Assembly (NCBI RefSeq): GCF_006345805.1
Contig: NC_043006.1
Location: 37,014,001-37,078,000 of the forward strand
Length of the DNA: 64,000 nt
Reading direction: 5' to 3'
DNA from: Octopus sinensis
Taxonomy: Eukaryota
Shown one piece after another: positions 19,525 through 41,005 of this stretch (positions are counted from its first letter, which is position 1; each line of letters opens with the position of its first letter). A program made the translations under genes and the position numbers. Under the pieces are notes generated by a model, which searched no databases, was not told the DNA's origin, and worked only from the letters and a program-made list of their open reading frames with translations.

Positions 19525-19593
<69 letters not shown>

Positions 19594-19596
<3 letters not shown>

Positions 19597-22228
19597 CAAC
19601 TCTAACCCCCAAAAGTTCTACCAAGAACTGGGAAAAAATAAAATCAACTCTAACCCCAAAAAGTTCTACCAAGAACTGGGAAAAAATAAAATAGAAGTCA
19701 CTGCAGCACCAACGGCAGAAGAATTGGAAGAATTCTGGGGAGAAATATGGTCGGCGAACGAAGCACCAAAAAAAAAGAAGTATCAGAATAACAAACTCGG
19801 CATCTGAACAACTTTGGACCCCCATAACAACTGAAGAGGTCACCCAGGCACTGCAAAGACTAAGCAACTGGAAGGCACCTGGGCATGACAAGATCCCCAA
19901 CTTCTGGTTGAAATATCTAACAGGAATGCACAAAAAGCTGGCTGAAAACTTTAACAAAGTACTAGCAGAGCCAGAGACAATGCCTGAATGGCTCACGAAG
20001 GGGAAAACCATCTTAATTCTCAAATCAAATGAAACAGAAAAACCAGAAAACTACAGACCAATAACCTGCCTCCCTACTATGTTCAAGGCATTTACTGCAG
20101 TGATATCACAAAGGCTGAACAAGCACCTGGACGAAAACAAACTGTTCCCAGAAGAGCAGAAAGGGTGCCGCAAAGGCTCATATGGCTGTAAAGATCAACT
20201 AATGATTAATAAAGCCATAACTGAAGACAGCCACAGAAAGAAGAAAGGCCTCAGTATGGCCTGGATTGACTACAAAAAGGCGTTTGATAGCATCCTCCAC
20301 ACATGGATCCTCGAAACACTAGCCATTAACAAAGTAGCACCAACAATCATAAAATTCATAGAGCACTCTATGAATAAATGGCAAACAGTCCTACACCTCC
20401 AAACAAAAGAGGGACTCATGAAAACCAAAGACATCCCCATTAGAAGAGGAATATTCCAGGGAGACACGCTCTCTCCACTCCTTTTCTGCTTGGCACTGTC
20501 ACCTCTATCTGATATGCTAAATAGAACTGGATGTGGATATAAATGTTACGGCAAAACGATCAGCCACCTTTTATATATGGATGACCTAAAACTATACGCT
20601 GCAAATGACAAACAGCTGGAAACACTATTAAAGACTTCATGGATTTACCAAAGAAATAGATATGAAATTTGGATTAGAAAAATGCGCCAAAGTAACCCTG
20701 AAAAGAGGAAAACTAGTTAAGAGTAACAACATCACACTAGATAAAACCAATGAAATAAAAGAATTAGACCAAAGCCAAACTTACAAATACTTAGGAATCC
20801 ATGAACTAGATAAGACACAACACACCACAAATGAAAGAGAAAATAAAAAAAGAATATTATAGACGAGTTAGATCAATACTAAACACAGAGCTCAATGCTA
20901 AAAACAAGATAATAGGTATCAACACTTTAGCTGTCCCAGTTATAAGTTACAGCTACAATATCCTTAACTGGACACGAAATGAACTGACCAAAATAGATAG
21001 GAAAACAAGAAAAATAATGACAGGATCTAGGATGTATCACCCAAAATCTGACATAGAAAGACTATATATACAACGTATAGAAGGTGGTAGAGGCCTTATA
21101 CAGCTGGAAAACTACTATAAAATAACCACCATAGGACTGCAAAAATATCTACTTCAGAAGGAAGGAAAACTGATCCAGATAGCGGCAAAACACGAGCAAA
21201 ACAAAAAACTGTTCTCAGTATTTAAGGAAGCTGACAAATACAAACAAGAAATCATACCACCTAATAAACATGAAGAAGAAGAAGAAGATGAAGAAACAAC
21301 AAAAGCTATAAAACAAATGAAATCCAAACTAAAAATAGAACAGCAACGAACCATGATAAAACGATGGCAAGAAAAGCCCCTTCATGGTAAATACTGGACT
21401 AAACTAAACGCAAAAGAAATAGACAAAGAAAAATCCCAGCAATGGTTGAGAAGCTCAGGACTCAAAGCAGAAACAGAGGGATTTTTAATTGCAGCACAAG
21501 ACCAAAGCCTCCCCACCAGAAATTACCAAAAACATGTAATGAAAAGAAATATTACAAGTAACTGCAGAATATGTGGAGATGGACAAGAAACAATAAATCA
21601 TATTATCTCTAGCTGCCCAGTCTTGGCTAAGAAGGAATATATTCACAGACATGACAGAGTTGGAACCTACATACATTGGAAGCTATGCCAACATTATGGA
21701 ATAACAACAGAAAAAAGATGGTATAGGCACACACCAGAAAAGGTCACAGAAAACGAGAAAGCAACCATACTCTGGGATATGCCGATACACACAGATAGAG
21801 AAATTAAGGCCAACAGACCAGATATAGTTGTCAGAGATCATGAAGAAAAAAATGCTTTCTAATTGATGTATCAATACCGGCTGATGACAACGTGTCTCTA
21901 AAAGAAATGGAGAAACTCTCAAAATACAAAGACCTGGAAATAGAGGTAACTAGAATGTGGAATCTGAAAACAGAAACAATTCCTATCATAGTAGGTGCAT
22001 TAGGCATGATAAAAAAATATTCAGACAAATACATAACAAAAACACCAGGACTTACAAACACATATAACATACAGAAAATTGCACTACTAGGCACTGCACA
22101 CATCCTACGCAGAACACTTTCCATACAATAACCATCAGAGCATCACAACAAATCACAGCACATACCCAAGGCACACAGAGCTGTGCTCGGTAGTGAAGTG
22201 AAAGCACGCTATAAAAATAAAACTACTG
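19594..22228 (+). mobile_element. 5'-truncated R4/Dong-clade (R2-superfamily) non-LTR retrotransposon in (TAA)n
   Basis: RT, zinc knuckle and restriction-like endonuclease motifs in the expected order; (TAA)n on both sides; ~100-bp 3' UTR. Confidence 0.92.
19690..22131 (+). pseudogene. Frameshifted RT / CCHC / REL endonuclease ORF
   Basis: NWKAPGHD, NYRPITCLPT, WIDYKKAFDS, GIFQGDTLSPLLF, LYMDDLKLY, YKYLGI, GGRGL, CRICGDGQETINHIISSC, RHD, RPDIVV, KLSKYKDLEIE; split across ORFs 19908-20720, 20662-20862, 20831-21862, 21892-22131. Confidence 0.93.
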
Positions 22229-22255
22229 AATAATGATAATAATAATAATATAATA

Positions 22256-22939
22256 AATGCCCTGATGCAGTACCAGGCAGTGGCTCTCATGGCTTCTGAT
22301 CTTAACTGATTGGAAGTGTTATCATGTACATTGTTTTGTCTTGGTATAAAAGATGGGCTACAGCAAATATTCTGCTCAATACAATGCCCTGATGCAGTAC
22401 CAGGCAGTGGCTCTCATGGCTTCTGATCTTAACTGATTGGAAGTGTTATCATGTACATTGTTTTGTCTTGGTATAAAAGATGGGCTACAGCAAATATTCT
22501 GCTCAATACCACAGATTTGCTTGTCAATTGTTTGACCTTAACCAGTTGAGCATGTTCCTTAGTGGCTGACGATATGTGCATCTCTGATCACGAGCAGAAG
22601 TAATGGGGGAGCATCATAGCCATGTGTTGAGAGGGATTCTTTGGGGTTTGAATAATTCACCTCTGGAAACATGGGTGGTTCTTTCAACATCCTTAAACAA
22701 CCCTTATTCAGGGACCTTTTGAGCGGGATGGGCTACTCAACCTGAAGAAAATTCTAACTGGGCCCCACCTGTAAGGTCATGTGCTGTTTATCTTGATATG
22801 AGATCACCATGTCGCGCACATATGGTTGTGATGCATGTGCCTGGTGTACCCTTATCAGACGGGTAGTCATGATGGGTATATTGGGCTTCGTATATTTTAC
22901 CCCAGTGTCACTTTGATGGCATGCACTGCTCTCTCACTC
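22256..22939 (+). mobile_element. Non-coding (TAA)n-flanked repeat (element X, ~560 bp) with 127-bp tandem duplication of its left end
   Basis: 22256-22382 = 22383-22509; (TAA)n at both ends; homologous to 18438-18852. Orientation assumed. Confidence 0.8.
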
Positions 22940-38544: not shown

Positions 38545-38750
38545 TTAATTTGTTTCATTCATTTGATTGCGGCCATGCTTCAGCACCGTCTTTAGTCGAG
38601 AAAATCGACCCCAGAACTTATTCTTTGTAAGCCTAGTACTTATTCTATCGGACTCTCTTTTGCCGAACCGCTAAGTTACGGGCACGTAGACACACCAGCT
38701 CGGTTGTCAAGCGAAGGTGGGGTGGGGAACAAACAAAGACACACAAATAT
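38545..38750 (-). mobile_element. SINE family A, 3' half
   Basis: Tail and body match. Confidence 0.87.
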
Positions 38751-38760
38751 ATATGTATGT

Positions 38761-39157
38761 ACAGTTCTATATTTAAGAGATGAGGAATTATTTACATTAT
38801 TTACATTATTTACATTTGACAGATATTTGTCCTTATCATGCAGATACGAATAACATATGGGAAACGGTATTAAGGAAAGATAGGAAAATATTGGATTTAT
38901 AAGCCCTAAAAGTCACTCTATAATTGCCCACTGGCGTATGGTGTAGTAGTTAAGAGCGTGGGCTATTAACCCCCGAGTTCGATTCCAGGCAGTGACCTGA
39001 ACAACAACAACAACAACAACATCGAAAAATACTTTAGGAATGAGATCCCATGTTCGAAATTTCTCCAAGACACCTGATGAAGGCTGGAGGGTATATTAGC
39101 CGAAACGTTGTGTTAACAACAAACAAGATGAGGACAAATATCCATCAAATGTAAATA
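38761..39157 (+). mobile_element. tRNA-headed SINE-like element with Penelope-type hammerhead tail and an inverted tail fragment upstream
   Basis: A-box-like tggtgtagtagt 38939-50, B-box gagttcgattcc 38975-86, cactg/cagtg closing stem, (AAC)n linker, HHR 39069-39114; ~38806-38837 is an imperfect inverse of 39127-39157. Confidence 0.7.
39069..39114 (+). ncRNA. Minimal Penelope-type (type I) hammerhead ribozyme
   Basis: GACAC-CUGAUGA-A-GGCU(12-nt loop)AGCC-GAAA-CG-UU-GUGUU: intact core, palindromic ACGU stem III, GUU triplet, 5-bp stem I. Confidence 0.75.
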
Positions 39158-39336
39158 TATATATATATATATAACAAAAGGGACATTAGCCATTTGAATG
39201 TGGCTAGGGACAGGGCAGGGCGGTGGGGGTGTTACTGATGCATTTAGCCCCAGGCGATCATCAACGTCACCAGATAGGCTTGACACCATCACGGTGTCCT
39301 CTATCCTGCAAAGGGAGATCATTCCCCGAAGAAGCG

Positions 39337-39397
39337 GATGCCACATACGGACCCAGGTTTCAAGGTGTTTGCCTCTCGTCAACGTATGGTAGGCACC
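39337..39397 (-). ncRNA. Type I hammerhead ribozyme, copy 1 (best stem I)
   Basis: Minus strand: GGUGCC-UAC-CAUACG / UUGACGA / GAGG-CAAACA-CCUU / GAAA-C-CUGG-GUC / CGUAUG-U-GGCAUC. Core, stems I-III and GUC site present; C3 is U. Confidence 0.82.
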
Positions 39398-39557
39398 GCC
39401 CCTCGACGAACGACTCTCAGTGCAGGATATTTATATATAGATTTTCACGTAAATACATTTACTGATTTCGAAAATCTGTTCGACAGCAATAATAATTCTC
39501 TAAACGAGATATAGACAGTAACTGCTCCATAACAAAAGGAGCAGTTCGTCGAGGGGC

Positions 39558-39645
39558 GGTGCCTACCATACGTTGACGAGAGGCAAACACCTTGAAACGT
39601 TGACGAGAGGCAAACACCTTGAAACCTGGGTCCGTATGTGGCATC
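39558..39645 (+). ncRNA. Type I hammerhead ribozyme, copy 2, with 27-bp internal duplication of core and stem II
   Basis: Same motif; cgttgacgagaggcaaacaccttgaaa occurs at 39571-39597 and 39598-39624; GUC at 39630-39632. Confidence 0.75.
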
Positions 39646-39942
39646 CGCTTCTTCGGGGAATGATCTCCCTTTGCAGGATAGAGGACACCGTGATGGTGTC
39701 AAGCCTATCTGGTGACGTTGATGATCGCCTGGGGCTAAATGCATCAGTACACCCCCCCCCGCCCTGCCCTGTCCCTAGCCACATTCAAATGGCTAATGTC
39801 CCTTTTGTTATGGAGCAGTTACTGTCTATATCTCGTTTAGAGAATTATTATTGCTGTCGAACAGATTTTCGAAATCAGTAAATGTATTTACGTGAAAATC
39901 TATATATAAATATCCTGCACAGAGAGTCGTTCGTCGAGGGGC

Positions 39943-40003
39943 GGTGCCTACAATACGTTGACGAGAGGCAAACACCTTGAAACCTGGGTCCGTATGTGGC
40001 ATC
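39943..40003 (+). ncRNA. Type I hammerhead ribozyme, copy 3
   Basis: UUGACGA 39958-64, GAGG/CCUU stem II, GAAA 39979-82, GUC 39988-90, stem I AUACG/CGUAU plus GGUGCC/GGCAUC (one C>A in stem I). Confidence 0.8.
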
Positions 40004-40633
40004 CGCTTCTTCGGGGAATGATCTCCCTTTGTAGGATAGAGGACACCGTGATGGTGTCAAGCCTATCTGGTGACGTTGATGATCGCCTGGGGCTAAATGC
40101 ATCAGTAACACCCCCACCGCCCTGCCCTGTCCCTAGCCACATTCAAATGGCTAATGTCCCTTTTGTTATGGAGCATTACTGTCTATATCTCGTTTAGAGA
40201 ATTATTATTGCTATAATATATATATATATATATATATAATATATATACAATATATATATATACACCACTGCATTAGAATAATAACTCTGCTACTAAAACC
40301 ACATCCTATTCAACGTTAGAATGCATTTAATTTTAAATGTTTGCACTGGCATGTCTTACCGAGGGTTAAGTGAAAACAAAGACATTTTTTTTTGCTCGAT
40401 TGAAAGAAAGCTTCGGCCGTGACCTTGTTCGTAATATTCTTTTCGTTTTTTATTCGCTTAACATATTGTTCGCAAGATTGAATTTTCCAGTATATTAATA
40501 AATTCTATTGTCGTTTCTGTTGTTGTTGTTGTGATTTAGTCCTAGGTTGACGCCACTGGTTTAACAGACTTTTGTTCGGGTTACTGTACCCCTACCCACA
40601 TAAGTTTCTTTAGGTTTGTGTGTGTGTATATAT

Positions 40634-40664
<31 letters not shown>

Positions 40665-40804
40665 TATATAAATTATATATATATATATGTGTGTGTGTTG
40701 TATGTGTATATATATATATATATTATATATATATATACACACACACATACAGACACACACATATATATATTATATATATATAATTATATATACATATATA
40801 TATA

Positions 40805-40835
<31 letters not shown>

Positions 40836-41005
40836 ATATATTTAGAGATAAAACCACTATTAGGCAAATCAAACAATGAAAAACATAAACCAAAACATAG
40901 AAATAAAAATAATTAATATAATATACAAAATATATAAAATACAAATTTAAAATTTAAATTATATATATATATAGATATATATATATAGATTATATATATA
41001 ACATA

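What the first reader, a model, noticed from the sequence alone, without database searches (positions are those of the whole stretch)
39171..40212. Candidate cephalopod retrozyme: 358-nt tandem monomer with one type I hammerhead per unit
Seen: a GC-rich, ORF-less 358-bp unit in tandem, each unit with a complete hammerhead fold. Predicted GUC cleavage sites at 39632 and 39990 are exactly one monomer apart. The unit has further pairings (gacacc/ggtgtc, tagcca/tggcta, long-range tgcaggata/tatcctgca) and stem I extends to ~13 more bp. Established: metazoan non-LTR retrozymes and newt satellite 2 are few-hundred-bp tandem repeats with type I hammerheads whose multimeric transcripts self-cleave to monomers that can circularise. 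Inference: this is an octopus member producing a ~358-nt linear or circular RNA; I do not know of it being described but cannot check.
Basis: partly seen in the sequence, partly recalled or inferred. Interest (0 to 1): 0.93.

Follow-up and report, generated by a model that had tools for sequence, protein, structure and literature searches.

The report
Hammerhead-bearing retrozyme insertion, Penelope-style layout
This is one young insertion of a small non-coding mobile repeat carrying a hammerhead self-cleaving RNA motif, a known animal element type (retrozyme); its head-to-head layout matches Penelope-like retrotransposon insertions, and its ribozyme core has one non-standard base, so self-cleavage is uncertain.

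Summary
The repeat and the hammerhead-like motif are real, but the description needs correcting. The locus 39171-40212 is not a plain tandem array. One full 358-nt unit lies on the minus strand (39171-39539). It abuts, head to head, 1.8 units on the plus strand (39544-40212). Both outer ends sit in (TA)n. Each arm carries a type I hammerhead fold with helix I of 6 bp, helix II of 4 bp and a short palindromic helix III of the kind that works as a dimer. This is the architecture of experimentally validated coral, mussel and axolotl retrozymes. A generic descriptor finds no such motif in 300 random 64-kb sequences. However, all three copies have U instead of the invariant C at core position 3, and G10.1-U11.1 instead of G-C. 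Rfam scores 21.8 bits against a threshold of 34, and one copy is further disturbed by a 27-nt internal duplication. Head-to-head arms, multi-unit length, no poly(A), a (TA)n target and 3' ends 44 nt apart match the published insertion signature of Penelope-like elements. Best reading: a non-autonomous, Penelope-mobilised retrozyme insertion with uncertain ribozyme activity. It is a new member of a known kind. The source organism, copy number and expression could not be checked.

The parts
39155..39170 (.). Left flank: (TA)n microsatellite abutting the 3' end of the inverted arm
   Evidence: Sequence read directly. (TA)n tracts cover only 3-5% of the window.
39171..39539 (-). Inverted arm: 1.03 units on the minus strand. 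The sense 5' end is at 39539 (unit position 169) and the sense 3' end at 39171 (unit position 179).
   Evidence: blastn of the unit against the window; inverted repeat I1, 369 nt, 99% complementary; alignment to the tandem reference shows 5 differences.
39344..39388 (-). Hammerhead of the inverted arm: helix I CAUACG/CGUAUG (6 bp), core UUGACGA, helix II GAGG/CCUU with loop CAAACA, GAAA, palindrome CCUGGG, UC. Predicted cleavage lies between 39350 and 39349.
   Evidence: The core and flanks match the plus-strand copies except one base in helix I, C versus A at unit position 320. Descriptor hit 39382-39350. Fold -30.1 kcal/mol, z=-2.8. Not listed by cmscan, for a reason I could not establish.
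39520..39543 (.). Head-to-head junction of the two arms, with a 9-nt fold-back (AACTGCTCC ... GGAGCAGTT) around ATAACAAAA
   Evidence: Sequence read directly (printout of 39515-39560).
39544..40212 (+). Direct arm: unit positions 297-358 (carrying a 27-nt duplication), one full unit, then positions 1-223. This is 1.8 units, with the sense 3' end at 40212.
39570..39625 (+). 27-nt tandem duplication (2.1 copies, 100% identical) of the hammerhead core strand plus helix II. It moves the 5' strand of helix I 27 nt away from the core of the first plus-strand hammerhead.
   Evidence: TRF; fold of 39556-39648.
39598..39634 (+). First plus-strand hammerhead, disturbed by the duplication. Its GUC ends at 39632.
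   Evidence: Rfam RF00163, 15.9 bits, model positions 5-41 only. Fails the descriptor because helix I is shorter than 5 bp.
39633..39990 (+). One full 358-nt monomer between the two predicted cleavage sites. It folds into a long helix I rod of about 42 bp plus side hairpins.
   Evidence: Linear MFE -110.9 kcal/mol, z=-2.4. Circular MFE -107.1, z=-2.5, 59% paired.
39952..39996 (+). Second plus-strand hammerhead. Its GUC ends at 39990. Helix I here has an A-G mismatch at its sixth pair.
   Evidence: Rfam RF00163, 21.8 bits against a gathering score of 34, E=0.029. Descriptor hit 39958-39990. Fold z=-2.7.
40170..40212 (+). Segment of 43 nt in this copy (44 unit positions, 180-223, with a 1-nt deletion) present at the 3' end of the direct arm but absent from the 3' end of the inverted arm. 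It is a candidate Penelope-type 'tail'.
   Evidence: End mapping. Published tails are 30-40 bp and correspond to two adjacent reverse-transcription start sites (PMC11167929; PMC8557442). Two ends falling this close by chance has a probability of about 0.25.
40213..40262 (.). Right flank: (TA)n microsatellite
   Evidence: TRF row 40212-40262.

Best explanation
The locus is a single, young retrotransposition product of a 358-nt non-coding repeat that carries one type I hammerhead per unit. This makes it a non-LTR retrozyme, a non-autonomous relative of Penelope-like elements (PLEs).

Inferred mechanism:
1. A multimeric or circular RNA of the element was copied by a PLE reverse transcriptase/GIY-YIG endonuclease.
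2. The enzyme cut both strands of an AT-rich (TA)n target and primed cDNA synthesis from both nicks.
3. Synthesis started at two nearby internal sites of the RNA (unit positions 179 and 223), with no poly(A).
4. The two cDNAs, each longer than one unit, met head to head at 39520-39543.

In a transcript holding two or more units, two hammerheads could pair their palindromic ACCUGGGU segments into a shared helix III, the 'double hammerhead'. They would cut after GUC, releasing a 358-nt RNA. Its ends are held together by a helix I rod of about 42 bp, ready for ligation by a tRNA ligase.

Shown here: the layout, the fold and its non-random nature, the lack of coding capacity, and the target and end positions. 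Inferred: who mobilised it, that it is transcribed, and that it cleaves. Because all three copies have U3 opposite G8 and G10.1-U11.1, cleavage by this locus is probably slow or lost.
For: Layout:
- The minus arm spans 39171-39539 and the plus arm 39544-40212. Their 5' ends are inward and their 3' ends outward, and each arm is longer than one unit.
- The arms differ at 5 or fewer positions, so they stem from one recent event.
- Both flanks are (TA)n, which covers only 3-5% of the window. Neither 3' end has poly(A).

Published PLE signature:
- Partial tandems, an inverted 5'-truncated copy adjacent to the 5' end, a 30-40-bp tail at one end and a (TA)n target bias (PMC8557442).
- Purified PLE protein cuts and extends both DNA strands at AT-rich sites and starts reverse transcription at two adjacent internal sites (PMC11167929).
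- Animal retrozymes co-occur with PLEs and resemble their pLTRs (preprint 10.64898/2026.07.22.740005; PMC7229834).

Hammerhead:
- Rfam RF00163 is the only plausible family hit.
- The descriptor finds 2 hits here against 0 in 300 random windows and 0 in 3000 random arrays.
- The architecture is the same as four validated retrozyme hammerheads.
- Loop 2 is CAAACA, against the Rfam consensus CAAAUA.
- Co-folding two copies gives an 8-bp intermolecular helix III, -25.0 kcal/mol against 2 x -10.0.
- The monomer is highly self-paired, z about -2.4 to -2.5.
Against: - Only one locus is available. No other copy exists in the window and none was found in the collections I could search. Family membership, copy number and conservation of the hammerhead relative to the rest of the unit are therefore untested.
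- The invariant C3 is U in all copies. The Rfam score is below the gathering score.
- No PLE ORF is present in the window. The only reverse transcriptase found is LINE-like, RVT_1 plus zf-RVT.
- The 44-nt offset between the 3' ends has about a 1 in 4 chance of arising by coincidence.
- LINE 'twin priming' also produces head-to-head inversions.
- My hammerhead descriptor was written after seeing the sequence.
Confidence: 0.65

Rival explanations
1. Same element, but mobilised by a LINE through twin priming rather than by a Penelope-like element. In twin priming the second-strand nick primes internally on the same RNA, which also gives a head-to-head inversion.
For: A LINE-like reverse transcriptase (RVT_1 plus zf-RVT) lies at 19908-21862 in the same window. 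The head-to-head geometry alone does not separate the two mechanisms. The retrozyme paper leaves both LINEs and PLEs open as mobilisers (PMC7229834).
Against: There is no poly(A) or A-rich tail at either 3' end. The two 3' ends fall within 44 nt of each other in unit coordinates, as expected for defined internal start sites (PMC11167929). The hammerhead and the (TA)n target are PLE hallmarks.
Confidence: 0.12
2. A dead relic. The insertion is a retrozyme copy, but the hammerhead is inactive (U3, G10.1-U11.1, 27-nt duplication) and the locus makes no processed or circular RNA. This concerns activity rather than identity, and it overlaps with the best explanation.
For: U replaces the invariant C3 in all three copies. 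Changes that break the C3-G8 pair abolish cleavage. All four validated retrozyme hammerheads have C3. The score is below the Rfam gathering score.
Against: U3 can still form a wobble pair with G8. The other core positions, the helix lengths and loop 2 are intact. Natural extended hammerheads are fast enough that a large loss could still leave useful activity (rates in PMC6155905; a mussel retrozyme works at about 0.1 per min). The copies are young and near-identical, so the parent carrying U3 was itself successfully mobilised.
Confidence: 0.4
3. The region is not a mobile element. It arose by local tandem and inverted duplication, or it is a foldback/MITE-type DNA transposon with TA target sites, and the hammerhead-like motif is a chance resemblance.
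For: Only one locus was seen. The Rfam score is below threshold, and scaled to the whole 64-kb window and all families its E-value would be about 1. There are long inverted repeats and TA flanks.
Against: The descriptor finds no such motif in 300 random windows. Loop 2 and the helix III palindrome match the family pattern. The outer termini are not inverted repeats of each other, being offset by 44 nt. Each arm is a circular permutation longer than one unit, which fits copying of a multimeric or circular template.
Confidence: 0.07
4. The inverted arm is an assembly artefact of a plain tandem array.
For: Tandem/inverted PLE structures are known to cause mis-assemblies in shotgun genomes (PMC8557442).
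Against: The junction is a specific sequence with a 9-nt fold-back. The two arms carry their own private differences. The left arm joins unique flanking DNA through (TA)n.
Confidence: 0.05

Closest known systems
Metazoan non-LTR retrozymes (Cervera and de la Pena 2020, PMC7229834), e.g. mussel Mg353, coral Amil224, axolotl Ax353/Ax330, newt satellite 2
   Same: The unit is a 358-nt ORF-less repeat, close to mussel Mg353 at 353 nt. It has one type I hammerhead per unit. The ribozyme has a 6-bp helix I, a 4-bp helix II, GAAA, a short palindrome, then UH. The monomer is highly self-paired, and helix I joins the two ends.
   Different: Only 1.8 direct units plus one inverted unit are present, rather than a long array. 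The core has U3 instead of C3, and G10.1-U11.1. There is no sequence similarity outside the ribozyme (blastn E>0.3). Expression, circular RNA and copy number are untested.
Penelope-like element insertions (Penelope/Poseidon, Neptune, Naiad; PMC8557442, PMC11167929, PMC4209133)
   Same: The locus has a partial tandem, an adjacent inverted copy joined at the 5' ends, a candidate tail at one end only, insertion into (TA)n, no poly(A), and a hammerhead of the dimer-dependent kind.
   Different: There is no RT or GIY-YIG ORF. The whole repeating unit is 358 nt, so the element is non-autonomous. The hammerhead is the 'canonical' metazoan form with a helix III palindrome, not the minimal form typical of PLE pLTRs. 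The candidate tail is 44 nt against the published 30-40 bp.
Hammerhead ribozyme type I, Rfam RF00163 (Schistosoma Sm-alpha, newt, cave cricket)
   Same: The topology, 12 of 13 invariant core positions, GUC at the cleavage site and loop 2 (CAAACA against consensus CAAAUA) all agree. From my memory of the Schistosoma ribozyme, not checked here, the UAC/U internal loop six pairs up helix I is also shared.
   Different: U3 opposite G8 is a wobble pair instead of Watson-Crick, and G10.1-U11.1 replaces G-C. The score is 21.8 bits against a gathering score of 34.

Membership tests
Hammerhead ribozyme type I (RF00163) | Three-helix junction with helix I open and helices II and III closed | tested here: met
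   cmscan alignment, RNAfold and descriptor. Helix III is only 2-3 bp on its own but reaches 8 bp in a dimer.
Hammerhead ribozyme type I (RF00163) | Invariant core C3 U4 G5 A6 N7 G8 A9 / G12 A13 A14 / A15.1-U16.1 H17 (PMC7151607) | tested here: not met
   All three copies read UUGACGA, so position 3 is U. All other core positions match. A strict-C3 descriptor finds nothing in the window.
Hammerhead ribozyme type I (RF00163) | Score at or above the Rfam gathering threshold | tested here: not met
   21.8 and 15.9 bits against 34.
Hammerhead ribozyme type I (RF00163) | Site-specific self-cleavage after H17 | not testable with these tools
   Needs in vitro transcription or RNA ends from the animal.
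Metazoan non-LTR retrozyme | Short head-to-tail repeat, monomer about 150-450 bp, from dimers to large multimers | tested here: met
   358-nt period with 1.8 direct copies. An extra inverted copy is not part of the published definition.
Metazoan non-LTR retrozyme | One type I hammerhead per monomer | tested here: inconclusive
   The fold is present in every unit but with the U3 core change, and one copy is disrupted by a 27-nt duplication.
Metazoan non-LTR retrozyme | No protein-coding capacity and no LTRs | tested here: met
   ORFs reach 102 aa at most and have no Pfam hit or homologue.
Metazoan non-LTR retrozyme | Low GC (<45%), as drawn in Figure 1C of PMC7229834 | tested here: not met
   The unit is 47% GC. 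The validated constructs themselves range from 37 to 58%, so this is not a strict criterion.
Metazoan non-LTR retrozyme | Many dispersed genomic copies; expressed as linear and circular monomer RNA | not testable with these tools
   There is one locus in the window. No collection on hand holds the source genome or its RNA.
Penelope-like element insertion signature | Partial tandem plus an inverted 5'-truncated copy joined at the 5' end | tested here: met
   compared with PMC8557442.
Penelope-like element insertion signature | Optional 30-40-bp tail at one end, reflecting two adjacent RT start sites | tested here: inconclusive
   The 3' ends lie at unit positions 179 and 223, 44 nt apart. The chance probability is about 0.25.
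Penelope-like element insertion signature | AT-rich / (TA)n target, no poly(A) | tested here: met
   Both flanks are (TA)n, which covers 3-5% of the window.
Penelope-like element (autonomous) | ORF with RT and GIY-YIG endonuclease | tested here: not met
   None in the unit. Among ORFs of 110 aa or more in the window, the only RT is LINE-like. The element is therefore non-autonomous at best.
Penelope-like element (non-autonomous derivative) | Sequence similarity of the unit to the pLTR of an autonomous PLE in the same genome | not testable with these tools
   The source genome is not available.

The most novel reading that the evidence does not exclude
The element belongs to a live retrozyme family whose hammerhead works with a U3-G8 wobble in the catalytic core. 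That natural core variant is not described in the papers I read, which report only U3-A8. On this reading, the locus would also be direct structural evidence that the Penelope machinery inserts retrozyme RNA, because it carries head-to-head arms, a tail and a (TA)n target. So far that link rests on co-occurrence and pLTR similarity. Read-through transcription would additionally make a 369-bp near-perfect hairpin, a ready substrate for RNA editing or small-RNA pathways.
Probability: 0.12. Interest if true: 0.6.

Novelty: new member of a known kind. Interest (0 to 1): 0.35.

Why it matters
Retrozymes and their circular RNAs are known from cnidarians to amphibians, so another family is not a surprise in itself. 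The layout of this insertion is the useful part. A non-coding hammerhead repeat inserted with the tandem/inverted, tail-bearing, (TA)n-targeted signature of Penelope-like elements gives structural support to the proposal that PLEs mobilise animal retrozymes. The retrozyme papers I read argue that proposal from co-occurrence and sequence similarity.

The locus also shows what standard surveys miss. TRF does not call this array, and strict CUGANGA descriptors reject its core. The pipeline described in 10.64898/2026.07.22.740005 detects tandem repeats with TRF first, so it would probably skip this locus.

If the U3 core proved active, it would add a natural variant to a very well studied ribozyme.

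Tried and rejected
1. Finding other family copies through spurious ORFs:
- A 75-aa minus-frame ORF covering the hammerhead gave no candidate in the 5.8-billion-protein index.
- A 79-aa plus-frame ORF searched against 1.84 billion representatives gave only one marginal hit (E=5e-4, 36 bits, over residues 31-61, which include the proline run), which I took to be low-complexity.

2. Exact-pattern scans:
- The hammerhead region was scanned with C/T allowed at core position 7 (the variable N7) and at position 11.1; position 3 lay outside the pattern. It found nothing in JGI metagenome contigs or IMG/VR.
- The helix I 3' strand found nothing in JGI metagenome contigs.

3. Identifying the organism. 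The window's LINE reverse transcriptase has its best match at only 58% identity, with no informative names. 'Cephalopod' remains unverified.

4. A whole-window Rfam scan at a permissive E-value is swamped by microsatellite-derived false microRNA matches and was of no use.

5. cmscan never listed the minus-strand hammerhead, although it matches the plus-strand one except for one base in helix I (against 24, 50). I relied on sequence identity, my descriptor and folding instead.

6. Similarity of the unit to validated coral, mussel and axolotl retrozymes: there is none outside the ribozyme.

7. Rejected readings:
- A coding gene.
- A tRNA or other known RNA family.
- A terminal-inverted-repeat DNA transposon, because the termini are offset by 44 nt.

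Full report
WHAT IS THERE

Reading 38600-40900 and comparing the region with itself gives a layout that differs from the one reported. Coordinates below use a 358-nt unit, with position 1 being the base after the predicted cleavage site at 39632.
- Minus arm: 39171-39539 is a slightly more than full-length copy on the minus strand. Its sense strand runs from unit position 169 at 39539 to position 179 at 39171. It spans 369 nt and is 99% complementary to 39801-40169.
- Plus arm: from 39544 the plus strand carries unit positions 297-358, then a full unit (39633-39990), then positions 1-223 (39991-40212).
- The two arms therefore meet head to head, with their 3' ends pointing outward.
- The junction (39520-39543) contains a 9-nt fold-back.
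- The first plus-strand unit carries a perfect 27-nt tandem duplication at 39570-39625.
- The copies differ from each other at five positions or fewer, so this is one recent event.
- Both outer ends abut (TA)n, and neither has poly(A).
- There is no other copy in the 64-kb window.
- TRF does not report a 358-nt period.
- GC content is 47-48% against 38% for the window, with an internal segment of 17-38%.

THE HAMMERHEAD

Each arm contains this sequence: CAUACG UUGACGA GAGG-CAAACA-CCUU GAA A-CCUGGG-U C | CGUAUG.
- Rfam's type I hammerhead model aligns it end to end at 39953-39995, with 21.8 bits and E=0.029 for the 1.6-kb stretch after multiplying by all 4227 families. That is below the gathering score of 34, and nothing in the window reaches a gathering score.
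- A generic type I descriptor required helix I of at least 5 bp, YUGANGA, helix II of at least 4 bp, GAAA, a closed helix III and UH. It finds exactly two sites in the window, 39958-39990 (+) and 39382-39350 (-). It finds none in 300 random 64-kb sequences or in 3000 random sequences with the composition of the array. I wrote the descriptor after seeing the sequence, which is a caveat.
- The third copy (GUC ending at 39632) fails because the 27-nt duplication displaces the 5' strand of helix I. It scores 15.9 bits.
- Placed beside the four retrozyme constructs tested experimentally by Cervera and de la Pena (supplement of PMC7229834), the architecture is the same part for part. That means a 6-bp helix I, a 7-nt core strand, a 13-14-nt helix II hairpin, GAAA, a 4-8-nt palindrome, then UH.
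- The palindrome (ACCUGGGU) cannot close a stable hairpin on its own. Two copies pair into an 8-bp intermolecular helix III, at -25.0 kcal/mol against 2 x -10.0. This is the 'double hammerhead' known from newt and viroid RNAs (PMC6155905; PMC4209133).
- Beyond helix I, pairing continues for about 42 bp and brings the two ends of the monomer together. The linear monomer folds at -110.9 kcal/mol (z -2.4) and the circular one at -107.1 (z -2.5, 59% paired).

WHAT IS WRONG WITH THE HAMMERHEAD

- In all three copies core position 3 is U, not the invariant C, and pair 10.1-11.1 is G-U rather than G-C. A strict-C3 descriptor finds nothing anywhere in the window.
- C3 pairs with G8. C3G or G8C abolish cleavage and the double change partly restores it (PMC11167929).
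- The compensated U3-A8 pair occurs naturally and is active (PMC4209133; PMC3088659). I found no report of U3 opposite G8.
- All four validated retrozyme hammerheads have C3.
- A U-G wobble may retain some activity. Extended hammerheads can be very fast, and a mussel retrozyme functions at about 0.1 per min, so a large loss need not be fatal. Even so, activity of this locus has to be called doubtful.

HOW IT GOT THERE

The layout matches the published signature of Penelope-like element insertions.
- That signature comprises partial tandems, an inverted 5'-truncated copy joined at the 5' end, a 30-40-bp tail at one end only, and a bias for (TA)n targets (PMC8557442).
- Purified PLE protein cuts AT-rich DNA on both strands and extends both. 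It starts reverse transcription at two adjacent internal sites of the RNA that define the tail (PMC11167929).
- Here both arms are longer than one unit, which implies a multimeric or circular template.
- The 3' ends fall at unit positions 179 and 223, 44 nt apart. By chance this has a probability of about 0.25, so it is only suggestive.
- The target is (TA)n, which occupies 3-5% of the window.
- There is no poly(A), which argues against LINE twin priming, the main alternative. A LINE-like RT does lie 18 kb away.
- No RT/GIY-YIG ORF is present in the unit or among the window's larger ORFs. The unit's ORFs have no homologues. The element is therefore non-autonomous.
[quoted passage not shown] That preprint does not discuss inverted copies or tails.

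WHAT COULD NOT BE DONE

- No collection on hand holds the source genome. Searches with ORF translations and with DNA patterns found no relatives.
- The window's LINE RT has no match above 58% identity. The organism, the copy number, conservation of the hammerhead across copies and expression are all untested.
- In the searchable literature I found no description of hammerhead repeats in cephalopods. That is weak evidence of absence.

VERDICT

- This is best read as a new member of a known kind: a retrozyme-type, hammerhead-bearing non-coding repeat inserted in Penelope style.
- Its ribozyme core is non-standard and possibly crippled.
- Its main value is as a clean single-locus example linking retrozymes to the PLE insertion mechanism, and as a pointer to a family worth a genome-wide look.
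- Interest is moderate to low (0.35).

Noticed in passing
window 19908-20720 and 20831-21862 (+): Two adjacent ORFs of 270 and 343 aa carry reverse-transcriptase (RVT_1, E=8e-26) and zf-RVT domains, so this is a LINE-type retrotransposon fragment. Its best match among 5.8 billion proteins is only 58% identical. It has no GIY-YIG domain, so it is not a Penelope-like element.
   Followed up: partly
window 38925-39021: A tRNA-like stretch with a B-box-like GAGTTCGATTCC is followed by (CAA)n, just upstream of the insertion. It looks like the head of a tRNA-derived SINE. ARAGORN calls no tRNA anywhere in the window.
   Followed up: no
window 22252-22509: A 127-bp unit is repeated twice at 99% identity, just downstream of the LINE fragment. 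Its nature is unknown.
   Followed up: no
window 19588-19692: A 48-bp unit is repeated 2.2 times at 96% identity, directly upstream of the LINE ORFs and next to an (AAT)24 tract.
   Followed up: no
whole window: Microsatellite density is very high, with 136 TRF rows, mostly TA, CA/TG, TATC and TGTA repeats. These generate hundreds of spurious sub-threshold microRNA matches in Rfam (mir-297, mir-466, mir-3149). None reaches a gathering score.
   Followed up: yes
window 39171-39539 versus 39801-40169: The two arms form a 369-bp, 99% complementary inverted repeat separated by 261 nt. A read-through transcript would fold into a long near-perfect hairpin, a possible substrate for RNA editing or small-RNA production. 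This is inference only.
   Followed up: no
window 39744-39762 versus 39224-39233 and 40107-40116: The C-rich tract at unit positions 116-126 exists in two versions. The middle plus-strand unit has one version. The inverted arm and the last plus-strand unit share the other. These two are the 3'-most units of the two arms. That would fit both arms having been copied from the same end of one template, but it could also be a later change in the middle unit.
   Followed up: partly
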